A stretch of 64,000 nt of DNA from Laetmonice hystrix. Lineage: Eukaryota. The notes beneath the pieces were generated by a model that did no database searches, was not told the DNA's origin, and saw nothing but the letters and a program-made list of their open reading frames with translations. The DNA is taken from assembly GCA_965235115.1 (NCBI GenBank), contig OZ249437.1:30628001-30692000 (forward strand). Direction: 5' to 3'. Shown here piece after piece: positions 136 to 38,200 of this stretch (within the stretch, counting starts at the first letter, position 1; each line of letters starts with the position of its first letter). Made by a program: the position numbers and the translations under genes.

Positions 136-183
136 TCGACATGTAGGCCTAGGCCTAACTTTAAAACGTTTTACCGTTTACAG

Positions 184-3100
184 TTCGCCATGCAAACGGG
201 CCTGGACTACCTGTCGATGAGAGCATGGGTGTGCATTTGGGTGACGGTCACCGCGGTCGTAATGGTGGCTGTAGAGGGCTCATTCATCGTCCGTTATTTC
301 ACGAGGTTTACCGTGGAAATATTCTCAGCTCTGATTTCGCTCATCTTTATATACGAGGTCGTTTATAAGCTATTCAAGGTGAGCCCCCTTTGATAACTTC
401 CGTCACCACTGCATGGGAAACATATTTATCGTAGTTGCCACGAGATTGTATTGTTTAGCTTTATAGAGTAAAATACGGTAGGCCTATAGACGATTTCTTC
501 TTTATATCTCAGGTGCGTGTCCAGGGGGAGGGGTCGAAGAGCCCCCGATCTTTTTTGTAGGTTGATATTGAAGCACGGGTGCTCCTGATGTGAGGCTTTG
601 ACCTCCACATCGTTGCCCCCCCTCTCCCCGCGATATATCGTGCACGTACGCGCCTGTATTTATATACCTATAAAGTTTCTTTTCAGGAAGGGTAGGCCTA
701 TTTGGGGTAAGATCTTTTTTTCATATTCACAATTTATACGCCTTATTAAGTAAGGTATTTTCCCGTTTTTTATTTGCCCACCAGGTGTTCCTCAGTCACC
801 CCCTTCAACCGTACTACCCACATCCCCTTCCTAATGGAGTTGACAGTTCCGCAAATTCTTCCATGGATGTCACTGTGGACCCAAATCTCACTGAGGTCTC
901 AGGAGAGTCTTTGAGAAATCCAAGCATTGTAAACCAGCCAAACACTGCCTTCCTGACTGTGATTCTTACTCTCGGCACGTTTTCCATCGCCTACTTTCTC
1001 AAACAGTTCCGTTACAGAAAGTTACTTTGGAAGAGTGTAAGTTGCCCACGTAGACAAATATTTTATATTCTAAACTTGGTAAACTTTTTTGGTGGGAGAT
1101 AGCTGATCAATTTCCAACTTTTCAGGCACGCCGAATACTGACAGACTTTGGTATCCCTATAGCCATTGTGGTAATGGTACTTGTTGACTTCTTAATTAAA
1201 GATACATACACTGAGGTTGGTAATCATCCTTTTAAAAGCAAACACCCAATATCTCTCATTTCAATGACTCTAAAATGCAATGCAGACATGGGGTGATAGG
1301 TTAGATAAGGCTTTAGACTACATGTATATCGACAGAAATGGAGAAATCTATAATGAAATTAAACATTTCAGTTGCCTGTTTTCGCTATAAAGCGATCGTC
1401 TTATGGCTGGTTGTTGACAAAATCGTTGACCTGACATTGACTTGAACAGTCCATGAAATTCATCGGACGATGAACCGATGAATTTCATTGTTCAAGTCCC
1501 TGCCAGGTCAACAACCAGCCACTAGACGATCGCTTCATAGCGGCATCAGGGCCCTGAAATGTTGAATTTCATTAGGTTCATCCATTTCTATGGGTATACA
1601 TTTATTGATTTATGTAGTCTCAGGCCTTTTGAGTCATTGAAATGGGAGATAGTCGGTATTCGCTTATTATTATTACAAGTAATAGTATATATCTCCTGAT
1701 GGACCTAGAGAATGCAGTGCTTATTTAGGTTCCCAGCTGTTGATGCACATGGTATAATTTCTAGGCTTCTGTCGCCCAACTGACAATTTGACAGAGTAAA
1801 AAAGACGGTGACGACTGAATACATGCAGTGATGTTTTCAGAAACTTTACGTTCCGTCTGGTGGGATCAAACCAACCAACGCTGCAGTACGTGGTTGGTTC
1901 ATCAATCCGCTAGGGGTACAGGCTCCGTTACCAATCTGGGCCATGTTCGCATCAGTCATCCCTGCCTTACTCGTCTTCATCCTGATATTCATGTCACATA
2001 TGATAACGGCGTAGGTAATGTATGGGCACTACCCCAAGTGTCAATGAGCATGGCGTATAATATGCTAACCATTGTTTATACAAATGGTGCAGAGAGAATA
2101 TGAAAATAAAACTCATCAAAGGTGGGGACAAGCTCGAGTAGGCCACTTACCTGTAGAACAAGCTGATCCATATTTCAGTAGGAGTACATGGTTAGTATAG
2201 CAGAATTTCTCATGCCCAACTCCGAAGAAACCCCCTTAATTCCGTTACCATACACCAGTATTTCCAGTGTTCAAATACCCCAAACGACAAAAAATTATAT
2301 TTCTCTAAGACATTTATAATGCTTTACATTTTAATTGTATTGATACATTTAGAATTATAGTCTTTCAAAAGAACAAGAAGGGTACGGGATTCCACCTGGA
2401 CCTTCTGCTGATTGGTGCGTTTGCCACGTTGGCGGGCCTGATCGGTGCACCTCTCATGGGAATTGGTCTGGTGCGCTCCGTCTCCCACGTGTCCTCACTC
2501 AGCATCTTCAGTCAGACTCACGCTCCTGGAGAGAGGCCCAAGCTGACAGGTGTCTACGAACAGCGGCTGACGGGACTGGCAGTCCACATAATGATTGGTG
2601 AGATTGGAGGCCCAATTCTGATTATCTCAGCGATTCTGTCCATCTTGCTTCCAAAGTTTTACTGTTACACTCCCTCCATGGACACGGAGCTGTGGGGGGG
2701 GGGGGGGGGGGGTCAATGAGCGGGTCAATGAGCGGAGTGAGACAAGAATTACTAGGAGAGAAAAGTTGGAGCGAGTTAGGCTGTGATCAATGTTAGGCTG
2801 CCCTCTCCCCCAAATCCTCTGATGTAAGTTAACAGATCCTCTGATGTAAGTTAACAGAGTGCCCTGGTGCTATTTCCAGGTGTGTCCGTGTTGATGGGAC
2901 CACTGCTGAGACAGATCCCTCTGGCCGTCCTGTTTGGTGTCTTCTTGTACATGGGCATCGCCTCCATGCGTGGCGTGCAGCTTTTTGAACGAGTGGAGTT
3001 GCTCTTCATGCCAAGGAAGCACCACCCTGACGTGTGCTATGTGAAACAGGTATAATGGAAGACTGTTTACCACCTCTGCTCAGGCACGGATACAATATGG

Positions 3101-4064
3101 GGGGGGGGGGGCGCTGGGGGTTTAAGCTCCTCCCTAGCTTGATCAATTTCGAATATTGGGGGGGGGGGGGGGGGAATGACCCCAGATCCCCAAAAGCGCA
3201 CCATATATACGGTGACGACAACTCTATGATCTCGCCACTCACCCAGTTTTGAAATCTGCTATTGTTTGGAGTTCTATGAAGGTCACTTTTGTAAGCTGAT
3301 CTTTTGAACTTCTCTGCATGAAAAATGTCTTCTTGCAGGTGAAAACTTACAAGATGCACATCTACACTTTGATTCAAGTGATCTGTCTTGCTGTGCTCTG
3401 GGCGGTCAAGTCAACAAAAGCCGCTCTAAGCTTTCCGTTTCTCCTGGTCCTATTGGTTCCACTCCGTCGTTACCTACTCCCAAAGATTTTCAGTGAATTG
3501 GAACTTCTCAATGTAAGCTGTTCTGTGACATTCCAAATTCAGGTATTTTTAACGGGCATCAGTCAATCCATACTGCGCGCACAAACGCAGTGCAGTTAAA
3601 AATACGAGACTATAGCTGGGAACTAATATTGTCTGTAAAGTTCTGGAAATTTGTTCAAAGTACATGGTGCCTGCCCTATACAAGCCACTCTTTGTATAAC
3701 AATGCATGCCTAGACATTTGGAAGACGTTCTTTTAGGCCTTTCTTCAAATTTAAGGTTTTTAAGAAATCTTTATTTTTAGATTTGACGCAAGCGCTCTAT
3801 TTCGTTGTATCTATAATGGCCTAGGGCAGGTTAGTTAGACAAGTCAAACCCCTAGTCAGTTCTCCGCAGTTATCGGAGAACTGACTATAGGGTGCCGATT
3901 TGTCTAACCAAAGGGCAGGTAGGCCTACCCCAGGACCTGCTCTTGGAACCCCGCCTGTTAGGCCTATAGTGATACAGCCGAATATTAATCTATTTATTTT
4001 CTAGCTGGACCGCAATGATGAAAACAGCAAGGTCGTTACTGACACCAAGGATGAACCAGATTGA
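184..4064 (+). CDS. SLC4 anion-exchanger family paralog 'SLC4-A'; 3' part only (TM4 to C-terminus), 5' exons lie left of the window
   Basis: Eight phase-consistent AG/GT exons: 184-378, 785-1036, 1126-1215, 1841-2010, 2353-2597, 2880-3049, 3339-3512, 4005-4064 (TGA at 4062-4064). Translation carries SLC4 membrane-domain motifs ([76 protein letters not shown]). Exon boundaries and phases match SLC4-B. Confidence 0.95.
1322..1601. mobile_element. Palindromic MITE in an SLC4-A intron
   Basis: Long imperfect inverted repeat (gctataaagcgatcgtc..tggctggttgttgac / gtcaacaaccagcca..gacgatcgcttcatagc) with a central perfect 14-bp stem atgaaattcatcgg/ccgatgaatttcat. Confidence 0.75.
2815..2858 (+). 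repeat. 22-nt minisatellite, 2 copies (TCCTCTGATGTAAGTTAACAGA)
   Basis: Two exact tandem units about 20 nt upstream of the 2880 acceptor; the same unit occurs 5 times at the homologous position in SLC4-B. Confidence 0.95.
3834..3908. repeat. Short palindromic hairpin element
   Basis: 14-bp stem tagtcagttctccg/cggagaactgacta with a 7-nt loop, plus an outer gttagacaa/ttgtctaac pair. Confidence 0.7.
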
Positions 4065-4601
4065 TTGCCACAACAGAACATTTGGCTGTTTGAGGTACCT
4101 ACTAAATACCAGGGGCGTTTGTTGATGTATACGCACCAGATGTGAACCACAGAAATCACCGCGTTGTGGGATGTTGATCAACAAACGAGCAATGTATGAC
4201 CACTCTATGCCTCGTCCCACTTATATCCTCATGGCGAGGGGTCACTGAGGTGTGTATTTGTTACGAGGGAAACAATGTGTAGGCCTACGCCCGGGCGTCT
4301 TGGCGTACGGCTCGGTTGTATAATACTTTGCAGTTATGAAGAACACACTAGCATTGGTACATCAGCGCTAGCTATCTTACTGGCCACACTTTCGCCTATG
4401 CATATCATGTGGTCTGCGGCGACACGTATGGCATTATAACCTTTGCAAAATTAAAGAATGTATATATTTGTATTCCATGTTTAAAAGTATGTGTGACCGT
4501 GATGTGCAATGCTTTAATACTATACACACATTGTACATGGACAGACTGGAGAGACACCAACGTTCAGTTTGAAATAACATTTTAATAATCTGTTTTGCCA
4601 T

Positions 4602-4793
4602 TAATACCGTTGACACACCAAAAACTTGTTTTTTCAATGCGCTTCGATGCGTATTGAATCCACATATGGATGTGGTTTGGGTTCATTGCGATTCAATGCG
4701 CATTGGGAACCGTGTTGGGTGTGTCACGAGCCGTATCACTGCGATTTGAAGCGATTTGAAGCGCATTGCAGCGTCGGTGTGTCAACGGTATTA
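4602..4793. mobile_element. MITE with perfect 18-bp TIRs (terminal TA included, probably a TA TSD)
   Basis: taataccgttgacacacc (4602-4619) and ggtgtgtcaacggtatta (4776-4793), with palindromic internal motifs. Confidence 0.85.
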
Positions 4794-4824
4794 GTGTTTT
4801 GTAGGGTAGCCGCACGTGACCGAA

Positions 4825-5070
4825 CTATGTGCTGTCATCCTTCAGTACCCTGAGAAGACGTCGATCTTCTCTCGCTGTGGTTTTTCTCGGCCGACCACTT
4901 CTATAAAACTTTCTCTTCTCTGCAGTTTCTTGGTACCTCGCCCATACCAGATAAACTATTTGGCGGTAGCAGTGAAACCGTCTGGCAATATTTTGGGCCG
5001 AAACACCTTCCTCTCTGAGGCAGATGATTTCTCGCCGTTCTGCATTTGTAAGATCTCGTACTTTTGGCAT
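4825..5070 (-). mobile_element. Tc1/mariner transposase N-terminal fragment (HTH plus GRPRK linker), degenerate
   Basis: MPKVRDLTNAERREIICLREEGVSAQNIARRFHC...RSGRPRKTTAREDRRLLR is the typical Tc1 DNA-binding region. It stops early and no DDE domain is visible. Confidence 0.85.
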
Positions 5071-7267
5071 GGTGACACAAAAGCGAACGTCCTTCTGCAC
5101 AATGACTTTCCATACTACTGTAACTTTTATAGCCTACAACAAACCTCCACATCTAATATGTAATGTGAAACTGAGAGGACACGGTTGAATGTGCGCTTCT
5201 AACGAGGGCATGTTGCAATACTTTATACAGCGAGTGTATACATCATGTATAATGTTTATGCCACGATATAAACATGCAAGACTGCATGAAATTATATAGG
5301 CATACGGCCTATGTTTAATTCTTACACATTTAGGCCTCTATGCGTGATGTAGAACGTAGTTATTTTCGATATTATTTCTATTCATGGTATTCGTGTGACA
5401 TTCAATAATAAATATTTTTTGTAGTCATTGTTTAAAATTATGTTTGATGTTATACCAATTGTTATAGGTGACACTCAATCATATATGTGATGCAGATATG
5501 TCTAAGGTCAAAGGTCAAAATATCTAGGGGAACAAATGAATTCGGTCCCTGCCTAGTTTTGATAGCTCAACAGTTTCTATAAACTGCCCATATGCATCTT
5601 GAAAACGACTCAATAACGTTACTCAGAACACGAATGACGTCATAACATTCTGACGTTACGTCATGTCTGAGTTGATTAGGTATTATCAACACATCTACCA
5701 AGTTTGACTTTAGATAGGCCTACCTTGAAAAACGATCGAGTGACGACCCCTGTTTACTACTATGCCTACGATACCGTACGATTTCAAGATCCGATTCCTC
5801 TTGATGGGGGAATGAGATAATTATTTTACTTCTAGGTCCTGCTAGTTGCTGACCGGTCGTGAAATAATTGATAGACAGTGGTTAAGGTACTACTTTAGGC
5901 CTATTGATGGCTTCCTTACGGGGAAGGACAGAGGTCCTATTTACATAACTTTTTCGTGTGGCCATTCTTCAGCTATCGATGTCTCAGTTTACGAGACAAG
6001 TAATCAGCCCCTCTGGGAGATTAGGGATAGAAGAGGGATTTTATTCTTGAGCGAGCAAATCAATACACCGAAATGTCAGTATAGAAGCATTGGCGAGAAG
6101 AAAGTGTCGAGCTGCAGATAAGAATAATATGTTTCAAATCTTTTATTGTAAAACATCTGTGATACAAAATGTAATCTACAGGCAAATAACTCAATAAAGC
6201 CACCTTATACACCCTTAAGAAAAGCATCATGGTTTTTCGCATGTGCCAATGAAGCGGGTACACAGCTATACGAAGACAACAAATATATTTTTATGCAAAA
6301 ACTGTAGCCAACAGGAAAACAATAAGTACATAAATAACAAGACGATATCAGCTTCTGTAATCTAATATATTGTAAGTTTTACCATGTAATACTGTAAGAG
6401 TCCAGTCTTATATCTGGAGTATACCTAGCACTGGTAAATTTACGGATCACCCCCCCCCCCCCCCCCCGGCGCCGTTTGCTTGGACGATATGAATTAACCC
6501 CCGCCCCATTCCCACTGCCTTCAGCAAAGACCCTGTATGCAACTTTCTTTTTTGTTGCCACATATCGCTCGGACCACGACCATTGTCAAATTTAAGCGTC
6601 ACGTTTAAAAGAATGTCAATATGACTGACCATATTCACATAATCTCAGCAAGAGGTATGCTATACGATAGCTATACATTATATACTAGCTACCTTTTAAT
6701 AGTCTATAAGTCGTAGCATCAAGTCTTACCAAGTCACAATAAGTGACAATGTATACTATACTGTCAGCAGTCGAGGGCTAACCTGGCATTCATTTGGGGC
6801 CTGATACATTATGTACAGTGTGTATTGTCTCTAAAACAAGTTATGCAGGTTGGTAGGTTTAATAACATTCATTTTCAATCACAAAATATGAAAAGAAAAA
6901 CTAGCAAAAGTTTAATTTTATAAACCACCGGAATAGGGAAAAGGCCTGTATTGACGAGTAAACGAAAATGTGCGGGTAATATAAGTTTTATGTGCCTATA
7001 ACTGCGGCTGTTATCGCTACTCAGGTTCTGTTCATCCTGTATCTTATACTGAACCTTTGAAAAATCTCAGCGAGCTCAGTCATGCGACTACTACAGCTGT
7101 CGTCTGCTACATCCGTTTGTATTGGTTGCAATGTTACACCGTTTATCATCATTATCCTGTACTTGTATAAACTTAAGATGATAACGGTCCTGCGGAGCTA
7201 AATCGTAACGAGGTTAGGCTGTAGCTGAATCCTCAATTTTCTGCCCGGTCGAAGAAGGGTTTCATAG

Positions 7268-7509
7268 CAGGGCCGGATCCGGGGGGGGGGGGGGGGGGTG
7301 TGCAACCCCCCTTAGAAATCCCAAAAAAAAAGAAAGAAAAAAGGTAACGAAGATGTCAAATGTTCGTCCTCCAGCCCAGGAACCACAGTGAAAATCTAGA
7401 ATCTAAAGCGATAAGTAGCCTAACGTTATATATTTCATAAAATAACAATAATTTCGGACTTGACAACTGCACCCCCCCCCCCTTAAAAAAAATCCTGGAT
7501 CCGGCCCTG
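7268..7509. mobile_element. hAT-like MITE with a 5-bp TSD (CATAG)
   Basis: TIR cagggccggatcc/ggatccggccctg; CATAG at 7263-7267 and 7510-7514. Confidence 0.85.
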
Positions 7510-7791
7510 CATAGTATACGGCCTCTTGGGGACATAAGTGTAAAAAAAGTTATACATACTTCGTTCCCGCGAAATCATTTCGAGGGAACGAATTGTGTTA
7601 TTTCATTCCCACAAAATTCGTGGTAACGACATAACCTAGGCATATTCCGTTCCGGCGAAATTATTTACTTCCAAAATTATTTCGTGAAAATGAAATATAT
7701 TATTTCGTTACGTCGAAAAGATTTTGCTATTTCTTTCCCTCAAAATCATTTCAGTTTTAATGGACTATCTTATCCAGACTCTTTAGGAAAG

Positions 7792-11307: not shown

Positions 11308-14300
11308 CTAGCTTGATTTCTTTAGGTCACTGTCTTTCACAAAATATTCTCTAAGAGCATTTAGTGCACGATATCGATGCGATATTGTGTTCTTCACATC
11401 TTTGTCCATTTCTGCATATGTTTGATCAAAACCATCTGGTTGAAAGCAAGGATCCCAACCAAAATCTCTGGGCCCTCTAGGTTGTACGATCTTTCCGGCA
11501 GTTTTCCCCTCAAAAACTAAAACTTCATCTTCTGGCTTTCCACTGGAGTACGCAAATGTGCATAAAGCATAAGCAGATTTGTCTTCGAATCCATTAAGCA
11601 GCTTAAATAGTCCTGAAAGCATACAATTAGAATTGCTCACTTACTAATACCCATGTATACTGTACAACGGAAAAGAATACGTATCTGACAGATTATTCAA
11701 GTATATTTGACTTTCTACCTATTTATGATATATTTATGTGTAAGTTCAGCCTTCTCAATAAGCGCCGGCGGCCAGCAGTTTTGCCCGCCCACATCCCAAA
11801 AACCGCTGGCAACTTTCTCAAAATCAAAAATCGTTTTTAGTCCAGTATGTCGTCCAACATAAATCTGAGTGTAACTGATCTATTTACCCCCCAAATTGAT
11901 GTCAATTTTACTCTCAGAATGTACAAGAGTTCACCTACAGACACCAAGAAATCAAAACTTTTCAGGGGGATGCCCCCAGACACCCCCCCCCCCCCCCAAG
12001 CAAGAGTGGGTTCCCTCTTCCCACCCCCAAGGTCAGCACGGCATCGACCTACGGCTGCTGCACTATAGGGCCACCTCCTACTTTGTCAACTTCCCCTTCT
12101 ACTATTATTGAAACCCCTGAAGTTAATACAATGTTATCACTTACCTTCTGGTTTTATCTTGTCAAGGAACCACTTAATATAAGGGCCTGGCATGCCTCCC
12201 AAAGCATTGAAACACAGACACGTGTCTTCAATCATTACTGGTCCTTTGATATGTTTGGCAGCTTCCTTACACTTAGCGATAGATATCTCGGCTGGTTCTC
12301 CTTGGTATTCTGGTAAGTCGATCTTCTGGCTCAACACCTGTAACAAGAACTACCTGTAATCACTATAATTCATTTATCTGACTACTGTAACAGCTCAGCC
12401 CCAACAATCTGTGATACCGAGCACACCATCTATCTCCTGTAAAGAATTGCCTCAATGCACTTTGGAAAGTCAGGTTTGAAGTAACGCTATAATATAAATG
12501 AGACGATCAGCCCTTACATCCTTGAGAGAGGACAGTTTTAAAATGCTATCATGAAAAATCAACATCAGCAGATATGGCCTGTTGTGAAGTTTCCTTGATG
12601 TGGTGCTAATTTAGTGAGCGGCATAATGTTGTTTAAGAAGATGGATGAAAAACATCTGCTAAGATATCTAATATAATACATTCACAAAGGATCTGGAAGT
12701 AGGAACACATCTGATGGTCTGACGTCGACAGTTTACAACCATTTTTTTGTCATGGCCTTTATGAAGAAAAAAAAGTCATCAACCCACCTTATAGGGAAAA
12801 GATTCACCAAGTATATGAACAACTTCTTTCAGCTTGTTGGCATTGCCAGTGACAAAAACAATTGACCGTGACATATCAGCATCTGTTAAGAAAATTAATC
12901 TGACAGATTAGGTAGTTTAGGTGGTGCTACCTGTCAGTACCAGGTTCATTACATTCATAACATCAGCAGATTCACTTTATTGCTAGCTATATATTGTATC
13001 ATGCTGAAGGTAATGTTTTCTTTAATAAATGTTTTACACACATACCTACCATATAATACATATTCAAAACATCACAAAAACTTTCCAGGAATATTTCTAA
13101 GTAAACCACACAATTATTTCCCCAGACAATGAACCAAGTTTGGGGTGTAACTTCCAGGGCAGCTGAAGTGTGGGGTGTCAAGTGTTACATTCCCCACATT
13201 AACACTTCCATAAATTGGGGTTCAGGTTAAAGTTGGGGGTAGGGGCAACACTTGTGATACAGGGAGTACGTTAGCGGTCGCCACGCTCGCAAACGCGAAT
13301 ACCTACCGCTTGTGGCGAGGTCCACTGCCAAAATAAACCAACAAATTCGCCACGCGTGCGAATTCCACTATCCCCCAGTTTATAGCCCAGGTATCCCCCG
13401 GGAGTGCCGTTTCTCTCAAAGCCCGCACGGCTCATCCGCCACATGTATTGACTCTGGGTGGAGCACTGTGTGTAGGTGTCACATGTAGGTGATCAGGGAC
13501 CATGGTGACCGATCCACACAGCCCGGTCACTGCGCCAGGCCAGGGTACCACATATATACGCACTGCCCAGGTCGCCGACCTTAGTGCTGGCCCGTCACCC
13601 CTTGGCCATGGCCCCCACTCCTCATGTGCTGGGAGAGGCCAGGTGATACCAGGTCACATGGCATGAAGGTGGGGAGTCAGCTCGGCCCGCTTAATATGGG
13701 GTGGGGTCGGGGTTGTTAGGGGGGATCGCCGCAATAAGGGGTATATAGGCTAGGTATGGTACCCCTCAATGTGGGCCGGGCCCCTACTGAGACATCCCGA
13801 TATTCTTGCCGAGAGGGCCACTTGTGTAGAGTTATCCTAGCTCTAGACAGCTCATTCCTTTAAAAAAAACTGTCACTACACACAGGCAGCAAATGACAGC
13901 GAATGAAAGTACCTTTCTTTTAAGAAACAGCAAACACTTTATAATATCAGAGTATGTGAACACCGTGGGACCGACGGCCCGAGACCCGCTAAAAACCTGT
14001 CGGTCCGACAGACCTTCCTATTTAGCAGGCCCGATTGTCCCGCACACATTTGGCTGTTATGTACCCACCTAAGTCCCAAGTAGGCATCCATTGAGGAGAC
14101 GCTGCTACACTACATGCAATAGACTCCACTACACTGTCCTTTAGCCAACCAGAGCACAGATATACATTTTACATTTATTTATACATTTATTCTATTGCAC
14201 CTGGTAATGACACCAGCATAATAAAGACGTGTTATATTCATGAGCATGCGTTTTTGTGTAATTTTTGAAAAGTGACGTATTTCAGTAGGTCAGACAGAAC

Positions 14301-14919: not shown

Positions 14920-15171
14920 CACAGCAGCTCTGCAAAACCCAGACATTAATCTCAGGATTCCCTTATGATCCATGACCACATCATATGTCATCTTACACAT
15001 GGCCTTTCCAGTTTCAGAGTTTGTGCCTTTACTTAGCTTCAGTGCCGGCTGTACAGAAGGTCAAGGTCCTGCTCAAGCCCCCTCCCCCCCCCCCCGGCAG
15101 TTTTGATAGGGATACCGCTCAAGTTCAACACACACACAAACACACACCATTGGACTGCTATCAGTAACTGT

Positions 15172-15468
15172 CAGGGGCGGATCTAGCTTTCAGGAAAGGT
15201 GGGGCAGGCGCGGATCCAAGGGGGGGGGGGGGTCCAGACTCCCCTCCCCCCTGCTCGGGACCAACTTAGGTTTTTGTAATGTTACCGGGGAAGGGCCCCA
15301 GACCATTGCCCCATCTCCCGGCAGTTCGCATCTTCTGGACCCCCCCCCCCCCTGCAAAAATTCCTGGATCCGCACCTGCATAATAACATAATAATAGTCA
15401 CCAGCTGGGGGGGGGGGGTTGCAACCCCACAACCCCCCCCCCCCCCCCTCCCTCTAGATCCGTCACTG
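15172..15468. mobile_element. hAT-like MITE (5-bp TSD ACTGT) containing a nested related MITE at 15205-15378
   Basis: Outer ends caggggcggatctag / ctagatccgtcactg with ACTGT at 15167-15171 and 15469-15473; inner ends caggcgcggatcca / tggatccgcacctg. Confidence 0.8.
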
Positions 15469-19830: not shown

Positions 19831-19919
19831 GACGCCTTTCGTCAATAAGCCAGGTGGGAGTCGCAATGCACCACCTATTTCGTCATGTAAACTATCTCGC
19901 TCAAAATAAGGAGTGTAAC

Positions 19920-26800: not shown

Positions 26801-29800
26801 CAGCCATATAAAATGGCTATATTGTATAGATGTCAACAGAGTTTAAAAGGACAGGGCATACCAATGTACATGTACTTTCAACAAGAGACAAAGGATGACA
26901 ATGCAGTAAACGTTCTCGTATGTGTGAACTCCACCTTTAGCATAAACAAAATCTCCAAAATCTTATATACACATGTACTATGTATCTACCGGTATTTTTT
27001 AGTATTCTTTCTCCACCCTTACCCACTCCTTTCATACATCATACAGTTTTTAACATACACTTGAGGATAATATTATTCTCACCTTCATATAGTGTGTTAA
27101 CTTTATTGATCATTGCTTTTATCTCTTCTGGTTCCACACTGTTAACAGTGATCTGAAATGAAGCATAACATGTACATTTTATTCAGGGATGAAAATGTGT
27201 TTTCAACTTAACTATCACTCTATTTGCCTGGATTCAGTTTGGACTGACTGACATGAAACATTTAAGCTGGCAACTTTATAACCTTAATCAAGAAAAATTT
27301 TGATCATGAAAATCAAATTAAAACTTAAAAGTTGAAAATGTCACTCTATATGTCAACATCAAATCACTTGCCTTTGATCCATCCCAGTCTTCTGTTTCAC
27401 CAGAGTTTAAATTTTGTACATAAAAGGACTAGAAAACAAGCAAATTCAAGATTAACATTAAAAGGTATTTGAGGAGCAACATTTCAATTTTAAAAAAAAT
27501 TCAAAATGGAGATCAATAATTCTTTTGGCCAAAACACAGGGTAATTTGCACACAACATATAAACATTGTGATAATAATTATAAATACCTACTGGTTGAAC
27601 ATCTGGCCTAGAATTGCACTTTTTAAGATGTTTGTTTAACATGTCTTCATAACAGGTACTGAAACAGATGTACCAGTAATGAAAATGAATTGCAATATGA
27701 ACTTAAAAACTAGGTAGTTGACAAAAAAGGATGTGGCTTATCCAAACCTCGGAAGGACTCTATGGGATGGACAGTGCTCTAAATCATTGTTCCTAAAACT
27801 TAAAAGTTGTGTTTAGACAACTGAACAACTGCTTAGGTCATACACTGAACAAAGCTATCAGCCAGAGTCTCTACGCTCTATAGACCTGTGGAACTGACTC
27901 AACATCAGATCATGTTGACCAACCCAGCATTTTCTTTGAAAAAGGACTGTGGAGCCATAAATCCATGTAAGATAGCCACTCCCCCCCTGTCCCATTTTGA
28001 AGTTGTGAATGCATTGTTTCATCTAAAACAGGCACTGGCCCATATACGGCATATATACTTTAGGTAAATTCTCCATTCGCTACCAAGAGGCACTACAGAT
28101 TCACAGGGGTCGTTTACAACCATTCCAGTTAGAACTGTAATTTTGTGGTGGGTATTCTATGCTCAAATTTATCAGTCAACATATCCCCAAAAATTCGAGC
28201 TCATATGAGAGACATGATGGTCACTGTTCAAATGAGACTGAAACACCCAGATATGAAATTTACAAGTGAACTGATGCCTCCAAAATTTGTGGACAAGATA
28301 TACTGCAAAAGAAATGATATATGTTCAGGTTACATTTTAGTACTGTATGTATGTTTGACCCAGAACAGACATAAATAGAGTAGTTTAGCCCAGGCAGGGG
28401 TAGTTTTCCCTCAATCACCATTTTAGTGTTGTTACTTAGACTCTGGGCATTTACACAGTTATAACACAGTTAACACAATCTGAAGACAATTCTTGGATTG
28501 TATATGAGACTTGGATACAGTTTAAGCCTGTAAACATAATCTAACTAAGAATTTGAACCACTTTTCCTGGATTTCTGCACTGTTGTCACAGACTTTCCAA
28601 GGCTCTCTAAGTCTTCAGCTGCATGTAGCATGGATTCCAGCAAGACTTACTGTTTTGGATCAAGGGGACATTGAATCCGTTTTCTGTCTTTTTCATTCTG
28701 AAAATACATCAGCAAAACAGTTCGCATGTAGCATATTTTAATAGGACGAACTTGGGGGATCCAAAAAGAGTACAATTACTTTTCTAGCGGTCGACTAAAA
28801 ATAATGGCCCCATTCCTTCTCTCTCTCTATAAAAAAAACCTATGTCATTATTATTATTATAAAAACAGATTACGTTTTCAGGGCAAGTTTTGAATGACTT
28901 CTTTAAGCCTTTATGACAAGTATTCATACAGCAGGAGGTAAGGAGGGGGGGGGGGGGTCAACAGTGGCAGAGGGGGAGGGGACATCTGCCCCCTCATATT
29001 CCCCAAAGTGCCCTTTTTACAACCAAAAGTCCTTTATTTTTACAAACAAATATGCCTTTTTTTTACAATCAAAAGAGTGCCCTTCGGTTTCCATGCCCCC
29101 CATTTCGTGATAAGATTACCATTTGTTGATGTGCTCTTTTTTATGCATGACCGATTTGCCCTTTTTATGCGTGACCGATTTGCAAGCCCTTATTGTGCTG
29201 GACAGATTTAGGGGAGGGTCTAGACCCCCTTTGGCATCAATTTTTCTCTTTTCCCCATAGTGGCATAGAGCTTTCTGAATTAACCGTGTGGGACCCCCCT
29301 CCCGGTTAACAGATTGCCCCCATGGACACCCCCCCCCTTTTCAAATTCCTGGATCTGCCTGTGTGGACCTCCCTGAAATTAAGCTGAATATAGCTCAATT
29401 TGCCCTTTTTAATATATTGGACTGCCCTGAATATAGACCCTAGAACTGCCCCTGGTCAAGGTGGCAAATTTTGCAAGGCATCCTAGTAGGCCTGTATGGG
29501 TATGGCTGGATCTATTCAATTCAGGAAGTTTTAGATGGGGGGGGGGGGGAGAAAGAGAAAGGGTGGGTACTAAAACCCCCTAACCTCACGACTGACTGTT
29601 ATTAATAAAGTCAACTGTGAAGTTAGGGGGTTTACCCCACCCTTTCTCTTTCTTTTATTCTCAAGTTATTGAAATACGTAAGACTTAGTCTTAGAGTCTT
29701 AGTCGTTACACCAAATTCAATGATTGAGCAATGATAATGATTGCTATAAATAGTATAATCATTATCATGGCATCATATGAGACCGGTATCTAAACAAGAA

Positions 29801-30102
29801 TTTACCGGCTTAACATGAGAATGTTCCACACAGAATTCTCTGCCGTCTGGCGGTATAGTCCGACAATATCTTCGCTTTCTCTGCAGGTAAAAGTGGCATC
29901 GTTCAGGCCGCAGTTCCCCGCGGGCCCCTGTCGGCGTGGGCGGCGTCCCCTCGGCCTGACACCGGCCCCCGTTCCCGTCTCTGTCGTCCCCGTCTCCCCC
30001 TGGTACCGCGGCCTCACCGGGCGACGGCCGCAACGACGCCCCAGCTGCGGAGGCACCCTCTCCTGAGCTCTCCTTCCTGGCCGAGCCCCTCACATCAGCC
30101 AT
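20820..30102 (-). CDS. TRMT13: tRNA:m(4)X modification methyltransferase TRM13 homolog, 519 aa
   Basis: 14 phase-consistent exons: 30102-29806, 28697-28651, 27658-27592, 27428-27372 (GC donor), 27152-27083, 26666-26560, 26280-26202, 25614-25526, 25175-25097, 23027-22953, 22798-22732, 22386-22211, 21607-21517, 21078-20820. Motifs: CCCH finger (CHFYLQRKRRYC..CVEH), CHHC finger (CPLDPKHTCYEDMLNKHLKKCN), KHLKQQASL, EFGAGK, GKHLCG, LALCCHHRC, CKKLIDMGR, ENVVL. Confidence 0.95.
23480..24279. mobile_element. hAT-like element with a 6-bp TSD (TATGCA), nested in 23233-25008
   Basis: TIR cagggtgtaaaatt/aattttacaccctg; TATGCA at 23474-23479 and 24280-24285. Confidence 0.85.
23843..24030. mobile_element. 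hAT-like MITE with a 5-bp TSD (ACTAG), third nesting level
   Basis: TIR cagggccatagcctg/caggctacggccctg (14 of 15 match); ACTAG at 23838-23842 and 24031-24035. Confidence 0.85.
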
Positions 30103-30199
30103 TTTAAGTACAAAAACTATAGATCTACGCTTTGTGCTGGCCCTTGCTAACTTCTCGAGTAATATTTAATCACTGCGGCGAACCACGCAGCCATCTATC

Positions 30200-30280
30200 C
30201 ACGTTGTCCCGACTTCCGGAAATAAACACACAGAGCCCCCTACAGACACATTTATTAGTGGCGCCATCTAGTGGTAGCAA
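30200..30280 (-). promoter_or_regulatory. TRMT13 proximal promoter with ETS and CTCF-like motifs
   Basis: acttccgg (30212-30219) and gcgccatctagtgg (30261-30274, reverse complement CCACTAGATGGCGC) lie 110-170 nt upstream of the ATG. Confidence 0.55.
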
Positions 30281-30350
30281 TAGAAACTTGGCCCAATAGC
30301 CTCTGGTTTGATCAGTAAAATTTAATGTTGGCTCGGGCTGAGTCACGCGG

Positions 30351-30485
30351 CCCGACCCCCCCCCCCCCCCGACCCCCCATTTTCCTAACTCTTGCCTATT
30401 TTCTATGTTTCATGTAGGCCCCTATAAAAAATGATATAACTTCGTTGAAAGATTTGGAAGAAATTTCTGCTCTAGAATGTTCTAC
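30351..30485. mobile_element. Truncated copy of the MITE family at 61326-61509
   Basis: Shared internal sequence aactcttgcctattttctatgtttcatg..gttgaaagatttgg..aaatttct.ctcta.atgttc after a poly-C run. Confidence 0.7.
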
Positions 30486-33400: not shown

Positions 33401-35205
33401 ATCCTCCGAATAGGTTGTCTTCATTTATGATCCAATAATTGAAAACATTTTGGCAAATTAAAACCGTCATCGACATTCTGCCTCGTATCACATCTATGTT
33501 TTACGTCTTTCCTCTGAACCTTAATCGCTCTATCACTAGTCACATAATTAGTGAACCAACCCTCGCTACATAATGACCCGAATTTCATACCATGTATTCA
33601 TACACGAAGTACACAGACAACTACGAAACACCTCCTTCAAGACGACACACATACAGGGTTGTCTGGAAATAGGACTATTTTCTTGATTACCATGCCCACC
33701 TAACTAAACTGACCCATAACGCCATAGGAACCATATGTGAAAGCATGCTCAGGAATGTGTCGGACTTCAAATTTTTATGACGATACATTGCATATTTTCC
33801 AGACGGGTCCATGTTTTTGGAACACTTTCTACCGATAGCTGTACTTGTAGCCCCGTGTATGCCGAGATGCGATAAACCTGCTAATATCTCTTGTTTTCAT
33901 GTCGCTTACATACCGCTATGTGATGTTAACTATATTATGGCATTCCCCTTCCCTCCACCTAAAAAGCTCGTCCACGAGGGTAGTGGATATGCACGACATA
34001 TCTGTACCAGAACATCTACAAAATGTGATAACCTTTGATAGGGCTTTCATAAAGTTGTCAGATATAAGCGATTCATATCATGGGCTATTTTTGTTTGCTC
34101 AAATCTAGCAAAGAATGTTACATAGATTCTTTGTCTCTGGCTACAAAATAAAAGCAACTATTTATAGAGACCGAGGGGGGGGGGGATCTGGAATCAACTG
34201 CCGGTTTTTTAAAGTTAGGCCTACTTGGTCCAAGTTTAAATAATCGACCCACCCCACTCGGCACTGATAACTATCAGGAGAAGACTTAATTTCCATTTGG
34301 GCGGATTATCAGAGGTCTGTTACAGGCTAGCTTCTGATATGGCTCCGTAGACATATTTTAATTACTTGAGATATTAAAAGCACCTGTACTTTGGCCATGC
34401 ATGTCTTTCATTCACCCACTGAGATCCGAATTCTGATCCACGCCAACAACCCGATCTGTGATACATACGTTCTCAGAAGTATGTCAGACATCAATGTGAT
34501 ATCCGATTTCTAAGTACAGGTTACTGCAGTCTGTCATGGGTCCATTCCCCATGGGTCAATTATACATTCTACACATGCCAGCACGCTATGCATCTCTAAT
34601 TATACATCACAGCACACTTTATATTCGGTTACATTATGGGCATTTAACAATACAGCTAATTAAAAGTATAGTACAGCAATAACAGTACAAAATGCCATGA
34701 ATATGGCTGGAAAGTACTTGTACTTGAAATATATAAACAACACGGTCTCAGAACTTCCTCTTGTCGGGAATTTCCCTCCTAGGGGATGCCTTGGTGAGAA
34801 TTTCATAATTTAATTGTATTTTAGACACACTGTATGTGAATGACACCTTGTATGTCAGACAAGGGCGAAACCCCTTGTTTATCAAACTGGCGAAAAATTA
34901 TTATAGTATTTATTTCTTTGCACGAATATATATTATACTGGAGCCGTTTAAAATGATTAGGGAAATAAAATTGAGGGGGGGGGGGGGGGCTGTATGTATG
35001 TCCTAGAGAGAAAATGGGAAATGTCCCTGGGGGAATTACCAAGCAACACACAAAATATTTTCCCTGCCCTGTATTTGTACACGTGTCTTTGTTGAGAGTT
35101 GTGCTCGAATGCCTCTGTATTGCGTATGTGTTTATGCTTGTGGGTGTGTGTGTGTGTTTGTGTCTGTTGTGGAGCTCTCTCAAGCTCGTATTTCCTCCCG
35201 TCCAA

Positions 35206-38200
35206 TCAAACAGGCATGTGCGCCTGCTGGTAGAAATCTGGTTCATCCTCTCCATCATTAACGTCGTCAGTACCGTCATCATCTCGGTCGAGCTAGAAGG
35301 ATATCAATCAAGATTTCAATGCATCATTACGAAACAACCCCTCATATCATATAACATATTACAGAAATCGATGAATAAACCAACTGGGTTAGAGGGGGCA
35401 TATGTTATTCTATACATTAGAAGCGGTGCTATGTTCTTCAATTACGTACGGTTTACATTAAAACTGTGGCTCCGGTTTCAAGATGAAATGACTTACATTG
35501 CTGAGCTCTTTCTCAGTAAAGCATCGTGGCAGGAGAAAACTACGTAGAGGAACCATGAGGATGAGGAAGAAGGGGAATCCCAGGGCGGCTTCTGTGGACT
35601 TCACGGCCCAGAGTACAGCAAGACAGATCAACTGGACCAACGTGTAAAGGTGCATCTTGTGGGTCTTCACCTGTAAAACGTATATGGTGGTGGTGGGGGT
35701 TAATAAACCATTTACATCAATAGAGCAACCTATCCACTTCACGTAGAATTGACAATAATAACTCTGGTCTGCTTGACAATATTGACATAAAGTTCATTAA
35801 ACGCTAGTATAAAAAAATGACCTACCCGCTTCACATAGCACACGCCAGGGTGGTGCTTCCTTGGCATGAACAGCAACTCGACTCGTTCAAAGAGCTGTAC
35901 ACCACTCATGGAGGCGATTCCCATGTACAAGAAGACACCAAACAGGACGGCCAGAGGGATCTGTCTCAGCAGTGGGCCCATCAACACGGACACACCTGGA
36001 AATAGCAGCAGGGCACTCTGTTAACTTACATCAGAGGATCTGTTAACTTACATCAGAGAATCTGTTAACTTACATCAGAGGATCTGTTAACTTACATCAG
36101 AGGATCTGTTAACTTACATCAGAGGATCTGTTTTTGATGGCAAATCAAAAATGGAGAGGAAAAGGGACCATAGGGGGGAGATAGGGGAAGGAGACCTCCG
36201 AGATATTCTCACCAATCATTATGTGGACTGCCAGTCCGGTCAGCCGCTGTTCGTAGACACCTGTCAGCTTGGGCCTCTCTCCAGGAGCGTGAGTCTGACT
36301 GAAGATGCTGAGTGAGGACACGTGGGAGACGGAGCGCACTGTGGCCACCACCATGAGAGGTGCACCGATCAGGCCCGCCAACGTGGCAAACGAACCAATC
36401 AACAGAAGGTCCAGGTGGAATCCCGTACCCTTCTTACTTTTTCGACTGACTATCATTCTGCATGGACAAAAAAAAAACATAGGTTAATAAAATACAGAAC
36501 ACCAAAATTAAACATAAAAAAAAGTCCGTACTACTTTGGTAGACTTTGGCGTCATCTGTTATTCAGCACTTTTCCTGAACTACCTCTTCCTTTCAACAGA
36601 CCATGGGCCAAGTGTTATTGACGGAGTCGTGTACACTTACCCTGTTATCATGCACTCCATGAATATCAGGATGAAGACGAGTAAGGCAGGGATGACTGAT
36701 GCGAATATGGCCCAGATTGGTAACGGAGCCTGTACCCCTAGCGGATTGATGAACCAACCACGTACTGCAGCATTGGTTGGTGTGATCCCACCAGACGGAA
36801 CGTAAAGTTTCTGTAAATATAGATTCCTCTTTATAATCTCAATTTTGAGCAGGATGCACTGCAAATAATCTAATAAATGTATACTCGAATAAGTACCCTG
36901 GCGTTTATGTAATCGAGCATATAATTGGATTTTTGAATCACAATCGATTCATAATGCAGGTAAGCCTATTTTGTGGTACATCGCCACAAACACGAAATCT
37001 GGTTGAAAGTAACTATCCATAGCCCTGACCTTATCCCTAGCTCCTAACCCGGGTCCCTACACCTCCCAAAATATTCCTGTCCTATCCCTGACCTTAACCC
37101 GAACCCCTACCCACAATTTTTGAGGGAAAGTTACCATGGGGGAATAACCTATTTTGGACCGTAATTCTTTGCCACAGACCTATAATCTGCCATCTGACAA
37201 AAGAAGCTAAGAGTTTTCGCCTTCGGAGCGAAAAGGGGAACTTAATAAGTTGGAATTTTTATTTATATTGGCCTACATGTTTCGGACCTGCCACGGTCCT
37301 TCATCATTCCTCAGGTTATAGGTCAGTGTCAAAGAACTGTACATAATAGGCCTACCTGCAAGGCACTTTTTACCTTGGTATATCACCAGCAAATCATACG
37401 GCAGAAACACTAAGTAGTACACAATCACATTGACTACATTCCTCCTACTAACAACAAAGGTTTCAACTTGAATACGAAATCATAAATAAGTCTGTTAGCT
37501 CTCTACTATTGTTACATACCTCAGTGTATGTATCCTTGATAAGGAAGTCAAGGAGCACCATTACTAAAATGGCTATAGGGATACCAAAGTCTCCCAGAGC
37601 TCGGCGTGCCTGAAAAGTTGAAATTTAATGCTACTACAAATTTAACAACAGCATCAGTAACGATAATCTCCGGCACATTTTATGTTACATCCTCGACGAA
37701 AGATCAACGTGATCATGAAACCTTTTCTTCAAAGTTCTCTTGTAGGTTACTGCTAATAACGGAATTCCCAATTAAACCCGTTTCATGAAGCAACAAGTAA
37801 ACAACAATTCCTCTATTATTCAAATTTGAATCTTGTCCTAGTAACAAGTAGAAGTCTGGTACTGAACCTGGTAAGACCTACCATCACAGTTTCCCAGGCC
37901 CAGTTTACAAGCAGAATCAATCAAATTGAAGTCACAAGCTGAGGTTATATAAGCTCCCGCAGGATAAAACCTTTCTTCAGCATGCCCACTAAGTATTTTA
38001 TACGTATTCATAGCCACACCACTTAAATTATTTGCAGATCAAAATTGTTCTCAAACTCAAGAGTGGCCAAAGTTTGGAACACATGGGATACCATTTGACC
38101 AGAGTGGTACGGCAGTTACAGGGGGCTAAGTCTCATAGAACATTTGAAATCCTACAAACTTACAGAACTTATTATATGCCATTCAGACAATTTATCTTAT

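What the first reader, a model, noticed from the sequence alone, without database searches (positions are those of the whole stretch)
184..36810. Tail-to-tail SLC4 paralogs show a gene-conversion mosaic with divergence islands at the transport site
Seen: identity between SLC4-A and SLC4-B varies sharply. The TM8 exon has 3 differences in its first 153 nt. The TM9-10 exon has 2 differences in the 84 nt before the TM10 site and 1 in the 127 nt after it. The next exon is about 94% identical and even shares intron sequence and a minisatellite. By contrast the TM13-14 exon (3339-3512 versus 35670-35497) differs at about 50 of 174 nt, many of them synonymous, and most introns are unalignable. Inside the homogenised block sit islands where 6 of 6 and 9 of 12 nt differ. 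Inference: an old inverted duplication with ongoing ectopic gene conversion, where selection protects a few function-determining codons. That is the classic signature of maintained neofunctionalisation.
Basis: partly seen in the sequence, partly recalled or inferred. Interest (0 to 1): 0.8.

Follow-up and report, generated by a model that had tools for sequence, protein, structure and literature searches.

The report
Gene-conversion mosaic between SLC4 paralogs
Two neighbouring bicarbonate/anion-transporter genes of an invertebrate share five near-identical exon patches copied from one gene to the other, while codons of the ion-binding site stay different; this is a clear but not new kind of paralog evolution.

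Summary
Gene A (+, 5' end off the window) and gene B (-, 35206-51404) are convergent SLC4 genes with nine shared membrane-domain exons, all with AG/GT splice sites.

- **Mosaic:** five patches (587 nt) differ at 1.7%, the other 1065 exonic nt at 20.4%. dS is 0.055 inside the patches and 0.62 outside, and 2.2 in the TM13-14 exon.
- **Not constraint:** the same columns are hardly less diverged in other paralog pairs (dS ratio 0.65-0.96, against 0.09 for A-B).
- **Not misassembly:** independent k-mer contigs bridge island, intron, exon and island.
- **Islands:** they align to AE1 E681/S682 and S725-T728, which overlap the S1 anion site.

The interpretation needs revision. A is probably not a plain inverted copy of B.
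- A lacks the whole Band_3_cyto domain; its exon 1 splices in frame to the TM1 exon.
- Three tandem genes 10 Mb away share this architecture and A's Gly-x-Gly at TM10, and resemble A in TM13-14.
- B keeps the states found in every database homologue, so conversion most likely ran from B to A and A's islands are old residues that were never overwritten.

Selection on the islands is plausible but untested. No sister species or RNA data were reachable.

The parts
184..378 (+). Gene A, TM3-4 exon; little or no conversion (A-B dS 0.81). Earlier A exons lie upstream of the window: exon 1 at -5913 to -5652, TM1 at -5502 to -5299, TM2 at -310 to -162 (locus L032).
785..1036 (+). Gene A, exon for extracellular loop 3 and TM5-6; intermediate divergence (dS 0.27).
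1126..1215 (+). Gene A, TM7 exon (dS 0.40).
1841..2010 (+). Gene A, TM8 exon. Conversion patch 1841-1993 (3 differences in 153 nt); diverged 3' end 1994-2010.
1994..1999 (+). A's TM8 island, TCA CAT (Ser-His), at the AE1 E681/S682 positions. B has GAG TGC (Glu-Cys) at 36652-36657.
2353..2597 (+). Gene A, TM9-10 exon. Diverged first 22 nt, then patches 2375-2459 (2 differences in 85 nt) and 2471-2597 (1 in 127 nt).
2459..2470 (+). A's TM10 island, GGA ATT GGT CTG (Gly-Ile-Gly-Leu), at the AE1 S725-T728 positions. The C-cluster genes have a similar Gly-Val/Ile-Gly.
2811..2879 (+). Shared intron tail before A's TM11-12 exon, with a 22-nt minisatellite (2814-2858, 2.0 copies). It is the only alignable intron sequence between A and B.
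2880..3049 (+). Gene A, TM11-12 exon. Patch 2880-2955 (1 difference in 76 nt); the 3' part is more diverged.
3339..3512 (+). Gene A, TM13-14 exon; unconverted (50 of 174 nt differ from B, dS 2.2). Slightly closer to the C cluster than to B.
4005..4064 (+). Gene A, last exon (LDRNDEN...DEPD, then stop); 9 residues shorter than in B.
35206..35292 (-). Gene B, last exon, ending ...FYQQAHMPV then stop.
35497..35670 (-). Gene B, TM13-14 exon.
35826..35995 (-). Gene B, TM11-12 exon.
35996..36132 (-). B's intron tail with the same 22-nt minisatellite (36017-36132, 5.3 copies).
36213..36457 (-). Gene B, TM9-10 exon. Its TM10 site, GTG GTG GCC ACA (Val-Val-Ala-Thr) at 36340-36351, matches the state in other species.
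36641..36810 (-). Gene B, TM8 exon, with Glu at the AE1 E681 position (36652-36657).
37520..40387 (-). Gene B, exons TM7 (37520-37609), ECL3/TM5-6 (38662-38916), TM3-4 (39246-39440), TM2 (39847-39995) and TM1 (40184-40387).
40610..49482 (-). Gene B, exons for the cytoplasmic domain (Band_3_cyto, PF07565), in open frames 40610-40849, 40888-41223, 47896-48201 and 49198-49482. Gene A has no counterpart.
50969..51404 (-). Gene B, probable first coding exon. A's exon 1 and the C genes' exon 1 are homologous to it, with the same phase-1 donor position.

Best explanation
B is a canonical full-length anion exchanger of the AE type. It has exon 1, a Band_3_cyto domain, a 14-TM domain, Glu at the AE1 E681 position and Val-Ala-Thr-Val-Arg at the start of TM10.

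A is a convergent neighbour about 31 kb away and belongs to a derived, lineage-specific branch of the same family. Its exon 1 is spliced in frame straight to the TM1 exon, so the cytoplasmic domain is absent. The acidic residue of TM8 is lost. The start of TM10 reads Gly-Ile-Gly-Leu. Three tandem genes 10 Mb away (C1-C3) share this architecture and similar site changes.

Short-tract non-allelic gene conversion, most likely from B to A, has recently overwritten five exon patches of A (587 nt, 1.7% different). Older events have partly homogenised other exons. The TM13-14 exon was never converted.

The tracts stop at exon borders, probably because the introns are no longer homologous. The one exception carried 69 nt of intron and a minisatellite.

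The codons that stay different sit at the substrate site. The likeliest reason is that A alleles which received B's site residues were removed by selection. A would then keep a different transport specificity, possibly divalent anions, as happens when AE1 E681 is neutralised.

What is shown: the mosaic, its pair specificity, the gene architectures and the positions of the islands. What is inferred: the direction of conversion, the A-C kinship, the role of selection and A's substrate.
For: **Mosaic and its significance:**

**Pair-specific low dS:** A-B 0.055 inside the patches and 0.62 outside (ratio 0.09). Control ratios on the same columns are B-C1 0.65, B-C3 0.83, R1-R2 0.74 and C1-C3 0.96.

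**DNA-level exchange:** the shared intron tail and minisatellite.

**Not an assembly artefact:** a 441-nt contig covers 1964-2404 and a 704-nt contig covers 1964-2667. Both join A's island, A's own intron and the near-identical exon.

**A lacks the cytoplasmic domain:** no PF07565 match within 600 kb, and none by tblastn in the 14 kb upstream. The exon 1 donor is phase 1 and joins the TM1 exon in frame. The C genes have the same layout and the same donor position.

**A-C kinship:**
- TM10 is GGA ATT GGT in A and GGA ATC GGA in C2, but GTG GTG GCC in B.
- TM13-14 site patterns: AC 18, AB 11, BC 11. With the outgroup: AC 4, AB 0, BC 1.
- The tree from outside the patches is (B,(A,C)) with support 69/78. 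The tree from inside is (A,B) with support 89/93.

**Direction:**
- B's states equal those of all 16 (TM8) and all 5 (TM10) database homologues.
- Sites derived in both A and B run at 3.3% in converted exons. That matches the B-only rate in unconverted exons (3.2%), not the A-only rate (6.1%).

**A is not decaying:**
- Open frame and all splice sites intact.
- dN/dS outside the patches is 0.23.
- The chance of no stop codon under random change is 0.03.

**Islands and the S1 site:** alignment to AE1 and the site composition in PMC13263692. Enrichment by Fisher test p = 0.004. Neutralising E681 turns AE1 into a divalent-anion transporter (PMC8714990).
Against: - The topological conflict is not significant. 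AU p = 0.09 for (A,C) inside the patches and 0.24 for (A,B) outside.
- A and C are both fast-evolving. A carries 35 derived amino-acid changes against 9 in B. Long-branch attraction or convergence could therefore mimic their kinship.
- The nucleotide likeness of the TM10 island to C is largely forced by the shared amino acids.
- A's TM8 state (Ser-His) is not the C state (Gln-Tyr).
- Four of the five patches end within about 10 nt of an exon border. That is unusual for genomic conversion and rests on an untested assumption about homology limits.
- No expression data exist for A.
- No population or sister-species data exist, so selection on the islands is only inferred from where they lie.
Confidence: 0.72

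Rival explanations
1. The islands are neutral leftovers. The conversion tracts simply ended there, or a cluster of mismatches was repaired back or blocked the heteroduplex. A is redundant or under relaxed constraint, and nothing is being protected.
For: - The TM8 'island' is the edge of a tract that runs on into an unalignable intron.
- Densely mismatched stretches are expected to resist heteroduplex formation.
- A evolves about four times faster than B at the protein level.
- A lacks the cytoplasmic domain and the C-terminal motif.
- No RNA evidence exists.
Against: - The TM10 island is a 12-nt patch flanked on both sides by near-identical sequence (85 and 127 nt).
- Three of the five S1-site residues in the block differ, against 11 of 161 other residues (p = 0.004).
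- A keeps an open frame, all its splice sites and dN/dS of about 0.23-0.26.
Confidence: 0.22
2. Conversion ran from A to B, or both ways. The shared patch sequence would then be A-lineage sequence.
For: With two sequences a tract has no intrinsic direction, and the unrooted topology is the same either way.
Against: - In the patches, sites derived in both A and B occur at B's slow rate, not A's (15 observed; about 15 expected for B to A, about 28 for A to B).
- Sites private to C rise by about the number of lost A-C shared sites.
- The patch amino-acid sequence is the conserved AE type seen in other species.
Confidence: 0.12
3. There was no conversion. A and B are plain duplicates, and the identity differences reflect stronger constraint, codon bias or a lower mutation rate in the TM8-TM12 exons.
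For: These exons are the most conserved in the family (Pfam and PDB scores).
Against: - Synonymous divergence drops eleven-fold only for the A-B pair; the same columns give ratios of 0.65-0.96 in four other pairs.
- An intron tail and a minisatellite are shared.
- Divergence changes abruptly within exons.
Confidence: 0.03
4. The near-identical patches are an assembly artefact: reads from B were collapsed or polished into A.
For: Patches 98-99% identical are longer than a short-read k-mer, and the k-mer contigs break inside them.
Against: - Contigs assembled independently from the reads join A-specific sequence on both sides of patches: 1964-2404 in two runs and 1964-2667 in a third.
- The patches still hold fixed A/B differences, and the B versions appear as separate contigs that continue into B's intron.
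- The runs come from a single sample, probably the one used for the assembly, so this is an independent assembly, not independent data.
Confidence: 0.03
5. The patches were copied from spliced B RNA or cDNA, which would explain why they coincide with exons.
For: Four of the five patches end at exon borders, and seven of the eight introns share nothing.
Against: - A keeps all its introns at the same positions.
- One patch includes 69 nt of intron with a minisatellite.
- Islands and diverged exon ends lie inside the exons.
Confidence: 0.05

Closest known systems
Islands of divergence that persist under interlocus gene conversion (for example the GOT1 paralogs of Tigriopus californicus, PMC3728101; from my own knowledge also the Teshima-Innan models and primate L/M opsins)
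   Same: Paralogs are homogenised in tracts while short segments stay different. The surviving differences are read as sites under selection for distinct function.
   Different: - Here the introns are not homogenised and the exons are, the reverse of the opsin case.
- The recipient is a structurally truncated paralog.
- A third paralog lineage allows the TM10 island to be read as probable old sequence, not new change.
- No population data are available here.
Vertebrate anion exchangers AE1-AE3 (SLC4A1-3; PDB 4yzf, 8gv8, 8y85)
   Same: - B has the PF00955 and PF07565 domains.
- B has Glu at the E681 position, Arg at the R730 position and a C-terminal ...MPV.
- For the TM8 exon the best PDB matches are AE1 and AE2.
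   Different: - A and C1-C3 lack the cytoplasmic domain.
- At the E681 position A has Ser and C has Gln.
- At the R730 position C1 has Thr and C2/C3 have Ser.
- A also lacks the last 9 residues.
AE1 E681 neutralisation (mouse E699Q; Woodward's reagent K treatment), reviewed in PMC8714990
   Same: The carboxylate next to the substrate pocket is lost, as in A (Ser) and C (Gln).
   Different: Those are laboratory modifications of a full-length exchanger. They shift it from monovalent to divalent anion transport. Nothing is known about transport by A.
Lineage-specific SLC4 duplicates in calcifying invertebrates (coral SLC4 genes, PMC4650655; sea urchin Slc4a10, PMC5986267)
   Same: A lineage-specific expansion of SLC4 genes in a marine-type invertebrate genome.
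   Different: I took only titles and abstracts from these papers.

Membership tests
SLC4 bicarbonate/anion transporter family | HCO3_cotransp membrane domain (Pfam PF00955) | tested here: met
   Exons of both genes match PF00955 above the cut-off. Examples: C2:30630369-30630599 (A, E = 3e-21) and C2:30664202-30664444 (B, E = 2e-24).
AE-type anion exchangers (SLC4A1-3-like) | N-terminal cytoplasmic domain (Band_3_cyto, PF07565) | tested here: met
   Met for B: four open frames cover profile positions 2-122 and 177-293. NOT met for A: no match in the genome scan near A, none by tblastn in the 14 kb upstream, and exon 1 joins the TM1 exon directly.
AE-type anion exchangers (SLC4A1-3-like) | Glutamate in TM8 at the AE1 E681 position | tested here: met
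   Met for B (FMECMIT aligned to AE1 residues 679-685), as in all 16 database homologues. NOT met for A (Ser) or for C1-C3 (Gln).
AE-type anion exchangers (SLC4A1-3-like) | Arginine at the start of TM10 (AE1 R730), preceded by Ala/Thr-Thr-Val | tested here: met
   The Arg is present in both A and B. The preceding residues are Val-Val-Ala-Thr-Val in B, as in other species, but Gly-Ile-Gly-Leu-Val in A. At the Arg position C1 has Thr and C2/C3 have Ser.
Interlocus (non-allelic) gene conversion | Synonymous divergence changes abruptly along the paralogs, specifically for that pair | tested here: met
   dS is 0.055 inside the patches and 0.62 outside, and 2.2 in TM13-14. Heterogeneity p = 9e-12. 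Control pairs give ratios of 0.65-0.96.
Interlocus (non-allelic) gene conversion | Different segments support different trees | tested here: inconclusive
   Inside the patches the tree is (A,B) at 89/93; outside it is (A,C) at 69/78. The AU tests do not reject the alternatives (p = 0.09 and 0.24).
Interlocus (non-allelic) gene conversion | Tracts include non-coding DNA | tested here: met
   Met for one patch only: 69 nt of intron plus a minisatellite. The other patches end at exon borders, and seven introns are unalignable.
Interlocus (non-allelic) gene conversion | Converted segments group by species, unconverted ones by paralog, in sister species | not testable with these tools
   The closest retrievable relative is saturated at synonymous sites (dS above 1.3, mostly above 2). 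Two protein searches found nothing closer than 76% identity.
Selection-maintained islands of divergence (neofunctionalised paralog) | Islands coincide with residues that determine function | tested here: met
   The islands align to AE1 E681/S682 and S725-T728. E681 and T727-V729 are listed in the S1 site in PMC13263692. Enrichment p = 0.004.
Selection-maintained islands of divergence (neofunctionalised paralog) | The recipient gene is expressed and differs in function; converted-island alleles are selected against | not testable with these tools
   No RNA runs were found and there are no population samples. The only indirect support is the open frame, the intact splice sites and dN/dS of about 0.23.

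The most novel reading that the evidence does not exclude
A and the C1-C3 genes may form a previously undescribed, lineage-specific class of 'membrane-domain-only' AE-type SLC4 transporters. They would have lost the whole cytoplasmic domain and rebuilt the E681/TM10 substrate site, perhaps for divalent anions such as sulfate, oxalate or carbonate. Conversion from the canonical neighbour B then acts as a natural swap experiment. Everything in TM8-TM12 of A can be replaced by B sequence except roughly six to twelve codons. Those codons would mark the minimal determinants of the new specificity.
Probability: 0.3. Interest if true: 0.7.

Novelty: new member of a known kind. Interest (0 to 1): 0.5.

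Why it matters
Gene conversion between paralogs with surviving islands of divergence is a known process, so the mechanism itself is not new.

The value of this case is its clarity and where the islands fall. A 12-nt island lies inside about 220 nt of near-identical exon, and it sits at the start of TM10, overlapping the anion-site residues T727-T728 that cryo-EM and simulation studies identify. The second island covers the E681 position.

If A is functional, nature has already done a chimera experiment. It nominates a handful of residues as enough to keep a different SLC4 specificity.

The analysis also reveals a small family of SLC4 genes without a cytoplasmic domain. Their physiology is unknown and could be tested directly.

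Tried and rejected
- **Sister-species test.** Not possible. One exhaustive representative search and two word-index searches returned only exon-sized fragments from distant relatives (at most 76% identity). The one closer assembly (P0001, 72% in the variable-loop exon) has no DNA served. A look-up of P0162 failed because the machine did not answer.
- **Expression.** No RNA run holds either gene. Read laying could use only short k-mer contigs, so strand, splicing and expression level are unknown.
- **Joints.** Contigs that skip about 440 nt (2713 to 3155) have only about 20 nt on one side and lie in poly-G repeats. I treat them as repeat artefacts, not as a deletion allele.
- **Best two-segment scan.** It only singled out the TM13-14 exon, so I mapped the tracts with a match/mismatch segment score instead.
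- **Apparent stop in C2's TM7 exon.** It is the TAG of the acceptor site, not a stop inside the exon.
- **Similarity between exon 1 of A or B and the C genes.** blastn and tblastn found none. A local protein alignment, together with the conserved donor position, shows the homology.
- **Earlier scan notes.** None exist for this place.
- **Not used.** Structure prediction, complex prediction and RNA tools, because no claim here depends on them.

Full report
**1. What is in the window**

The window is C2:30628001-30692000 of a 627-Mb eukaryotic assembly with 35 contigs. It has no N runs. A self-comparison finds one inverted series of matches, 178-3482 (+) against 39446-35527 (-), at 77-94% identity.

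The open frames in these blocks are SLC4 membrane-domain exons. The best solved-structure matches are AE1-3, NBCn1 and NDCBE. The closest named full-length proteins are AE2-like or band-3-like proteins of molluscs, a priapulid, a sea cucumber and a hemichordate. The organism's name is hidden from me. I treat it as an invertebrate.

The genome holds about ten SLC4 loci.

**2. Gene models**

I fetched 20 kb upstream of the window and defined nine homologous membrane-domain exons in both genes. All 36 splice sites are AG or GT, and both reading frames are continuous.
- Gene A (+): TM1 exon at window -5502 to -5299, running to the TM13-14 exon at 3339-3512. The last exon is 4005-4064.
- Gene B (-): TM1 exon at 40387-40184, running to the TM13-14 exon at 35670-35497. 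The last exon is 35292-35206.

About 31 kb separates them. That interval contains a Ham1/ITPase exon, a TRM13-type zinc-finger exon and transposon fragments.

**3.

Per-exon identity and Nei-Gojobori dS for A against B:

| Exon | Identity | dS |
|---|---|---|
| TM1 | 89.2% | 0.24 |
| TM2 | 87.2% | 0.43 |
| TM3-4 | 81.0% | 0.81 |
| ECL3/TM5-6 | 83.7% | 0.27 |
| TM7 | 84.4% | 0.40 |
| TM8 | 93.5% | 0.10 |
| TM9-10 | 92.2% | 0.125 |
| TM11-12 | 93.5% | 0.22 |
| TM13-14 | 71.3% | 2.2 |

- Heterogeneity of synonymous differences among exons: chi-square 68.7, p = 9e-12.
- The longest run of synonymously identical codons is 47 (permutation p = 0.003).

A segment score resolves five patches:
- -5458 to -5313 (146 nt, 3 differences)
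- 1841-1993 (153 nt, 3 differences)
- 2375-2459 (85 nt, 2 differences)
- 2471-2597 (127 nt, 1 difference)
- 2880-2955 (76 nt, 1 difference)

Together the patches are 587 nt at 1.7% difference, against 1065 nt at 20.4% outside them.

Seven of the eight shared introns are indistinguishable from shuffled sequence, and their lengths differ widely (for example 4988 against 188 nt). The intron before the TM11-12 exon shares its last 69 nt. That stretch includes a 22-nt minisatellite with 2.0 copies in A and 5.3 in B.

**4. Controls**

*Constraint or mutation rate.* On the same alignment columns, the ratio of dS inside the patches to dS outside is 0.09 for A-B. It is 0.65 for B-C1, 0.83 for B-C3, 0.74 for the duplicated pair R1-R2 of another species, and 0.96 for C1-C3. 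The drop is therefore a property of the A-B pair, not of the columns.

*Misassembly.* k-mer contigs built independently from public reads of the same organism include three bridging pieces. A 441-nt contig covers 1964-2404 in two runs. A 704-nt contig covers 1964-2667 in a third. They join the TM8 island, A's private intron, the near-identical TM9-10 exon with its TM10 island, and the next intron. B's versions appear as separate contigs that run into B's own intron. The 704-nt contig differs from the reference at 9 positions, mostly in the intron. This suggests allelic diversity of the same order as the patch divergence, so the patches are very young.

**5. A is not a plain copy of B**

- B carries a full Band_3_cyto domain spread over open frames at 40610-49482.
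- A has none. The whole-genome scan for PF07565 has no hit near A. tblastn with B's cytoplasmic exons finds nothing in the 14 kb upstream of A's TM1 exon.
- Instead, an exon weakly homologous to B's exon 1 lies just upstream of A's TM1 exon. Its donor is at the same position and phase as B's (ATCG|GTAGG). It joins the TM1 exon in frame across a 148-nt intron.
- A's last exon also stops 9 residues before B's ...FYQQAHMPV.

**6. A third lineage**

Three tandem SLC4 genes at C2:20.66-20.78 Mb (C1-C3) are 60-81% identical to B exon by exon at the protein level.
- They have no Band_3_cyto match.
- They have the same layout: an exon 1 homologous to that of A and B, with the same phase-1 donor, followed directly by the TM1 exon.
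- Their TM8 site reads Gln-Tyr. Their TM10 start reads Gly-Val/Ile-Gly in C1 and C2, and Gly-Ile-Thr in C3. At the R730 position they have Thr (C1) or Ser (C2, C3) instead of Arg.

A's TM10 island (GGA ATT GGT CTG) resembles the C state (GGA ATC GGA in C2). B's island (GTG GTG GCC ACA) shares GTG GCC ACA with a distant species.

In the unconverted TM13-14 exon, sites uniting A with C outnumber the others: AC 18, AB 11, BC 11. With the outgroup the counts are AC 4, AB 0, BC 1. In the TM9-10 exon the counts are AB 46, AC 5, BC 5.

Maximum-likelihood trees give (A,B) inside the patches (support 89/93) and (B,(A,C)) outside (support 69/78). The AU tests do not reject the alternatives (p = 0.09 and 0.24).

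I therefore rate the A-C kinship as likely (about 0.7), resting mainly on the shared architecture. It is not proven.

**7. Direction of conversion**

- All 16 database homologues of the TM8 exon have Glu at the E681 position. All 5 homologues of the TM10 exon have Val/Phe-Ala-Thr-Val-Arg. B is therefore the conserved type.
- Using the distant species as outgroup, A has 80 derived nucleotide changes and B has 39. At the amino-acid level the counts are 35 and 9 (p = 1e-4).
- In converted exons, sites derived jointly in A and B occur at 3.3%. This equals B's private rate in unconverted exons (3.2%), not A's (6.1%). Sites private to C rise by about the number of lost A-C sites.

This fits conversion from B to A. 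It is an inference from small counts.

**8. Is A alive?**

Outside the patches dN/dS is 0.23. My rough split gives about 0.26 on A's branch and 0.09 on B's. The frame is open and all splice sites are intact. Placing half the observed differences at random leaves the frame open in only 2.8% of trials. A is therefore constrained but evolving faster than B. Its expression could not be tested.

**9. The islands and the transport site**

By alignment to AE1 (4yzf numbering), B's Glu-Cys corresponds to E681-S682. The four TM10 island codons correspond to S725-T728, just before V729 and R730.

A 2026 review lists the AE1 S1 site as S465, G466, I528, F532, E681, T727-V729 and R730 (PMC13263692). Within the TM8-to-mid-TM11-12 block, 3 of the 5 S1 residues differ between A and B, against 11 of 161 other residues (Fisher p = 0.004).

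[quoted passage not shown] This prompts the hypothesis that A (Ser) and C (Gln) handle different anions.

One caution. The TM8 island is the edge of a tract, and the diverged stretch continues through the intron into the first 22 nt of the next exon. Only the TM10 island is truly internal.

**10. Mechanism proposed**

Short-tract non-allelic conversion occurs between inverted paralogs 32-46 kb apart. It can start only in exons that purifying selection had kept similar enough, and it ends where homology ends, at the introns. One event carried an intron tail with a minisatellite. Alleles of A that received B's site residues were removed by selection. Alternatively, the mismatch cluster itself resisted conversion.

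Intermediate dS values (0.24-0.43) in the TM1, TM2, ECL3 and TM7 exons point to older events. TM13-14 and the last exon escaped, and TM3-4 largely so.

**11. Comparison and verdict**

The pattern belongs to the known class of 'islands of divergence under gene conversion' (for example PMC3728101). Two other first-stage notes in this genome also report conversion tracts between paralogs (I did not check them).

It is a clean new example, not a new kind of system. What this analysis adds is the domain-less SLC4 subfamily, and the evidence that A's TM10 island is probably old sequence surviving an overwrite from a canonical neighbour.

Noticed in passing
G000:C2:20661000-20780000 (loci L034-L046): There are three tandem SLC4 genes (C1-C3) without a Band_3_cyto domain. 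They have Gln-Tyr at the E681/S682 positions and Thr (C1) or Ser (C2, C3) at the R730 position. Their pairwise dS is about 0 in some exons but 0.1-0.25 in others, so they may have their own conversion mosaic. The TM11-14 exons that seem to belong to C2 lie about 45 kb downstream of its TM9-10 exon.
   Followed up: partly
window 4005-4064 (+) against 35206-35292 (-): A's last exon ends 9 residues early. It lacks the ...FYQQAHMPV tail that B and the other species' genes keep.
   Followed up: partly
window 11311-11640 (-), 29776-30165 (-): Unrelated genes lie between the two SLC4 genes: a Ham1/ITPase exon (PF01725, E = 2e-28) and a TRM13-type CCCH zinc-finger exon (PF11722, E = 8e-11).
   Followed up: partly
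window 4828-5133 (-), 57166-57830 (-): These look like transposon remnants. One open frame has a CENP-B/HTH-type DNA-binding motif. Two others resemble retroelement integrase (Integrase_H2C2, below the curated cut-off).
   Followed up: no
window 2694-2712 and about 3110-3170: A run of 19 G and other G-rich stretches sit in A's introns. k-mer contigs pile up here at very high depth, and some 'join' 2713 to 3155 with only about 20 nt on one side. This is most likely a dispersed G-rich repeat, not a deletion allele.
   Followed up: no
window 1964-2667: One run's 704-nt contig differs from the reference at 9 positions, nearly all in A's intron (2018-2350). This suggests about 1.3% allelic diversity, similar to the A-B divergence inside the patches.
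   Followed up: no
L033 and L048 (ena:ERZ25767047 ctg38987, about 52 kb apart, same strand); L047 (another contig): A distant relative has its own tandem pair of full-length AE-type genes (R1, R2). Their dS varies by exon from 0.35 to 1.1. L047 carries an exon product identical to L048's, so it may be a haplotig or a recent copy.
   Followed up: partly
window 4-135 against 7378-7509; 30362-30482 against 61342-61450: These are dispersed direct repeats at 78% identity, unrelated to the SLC4 genes.
   Followed up: no
G000:C29:20045000-20065000 (-) and 20196000-20209000 (+): A second pair of full-length SLC4 genes in inverted orientation lies about 130 kb apart on another chromosome. I did not examine it for conversion.
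   Followed up: no
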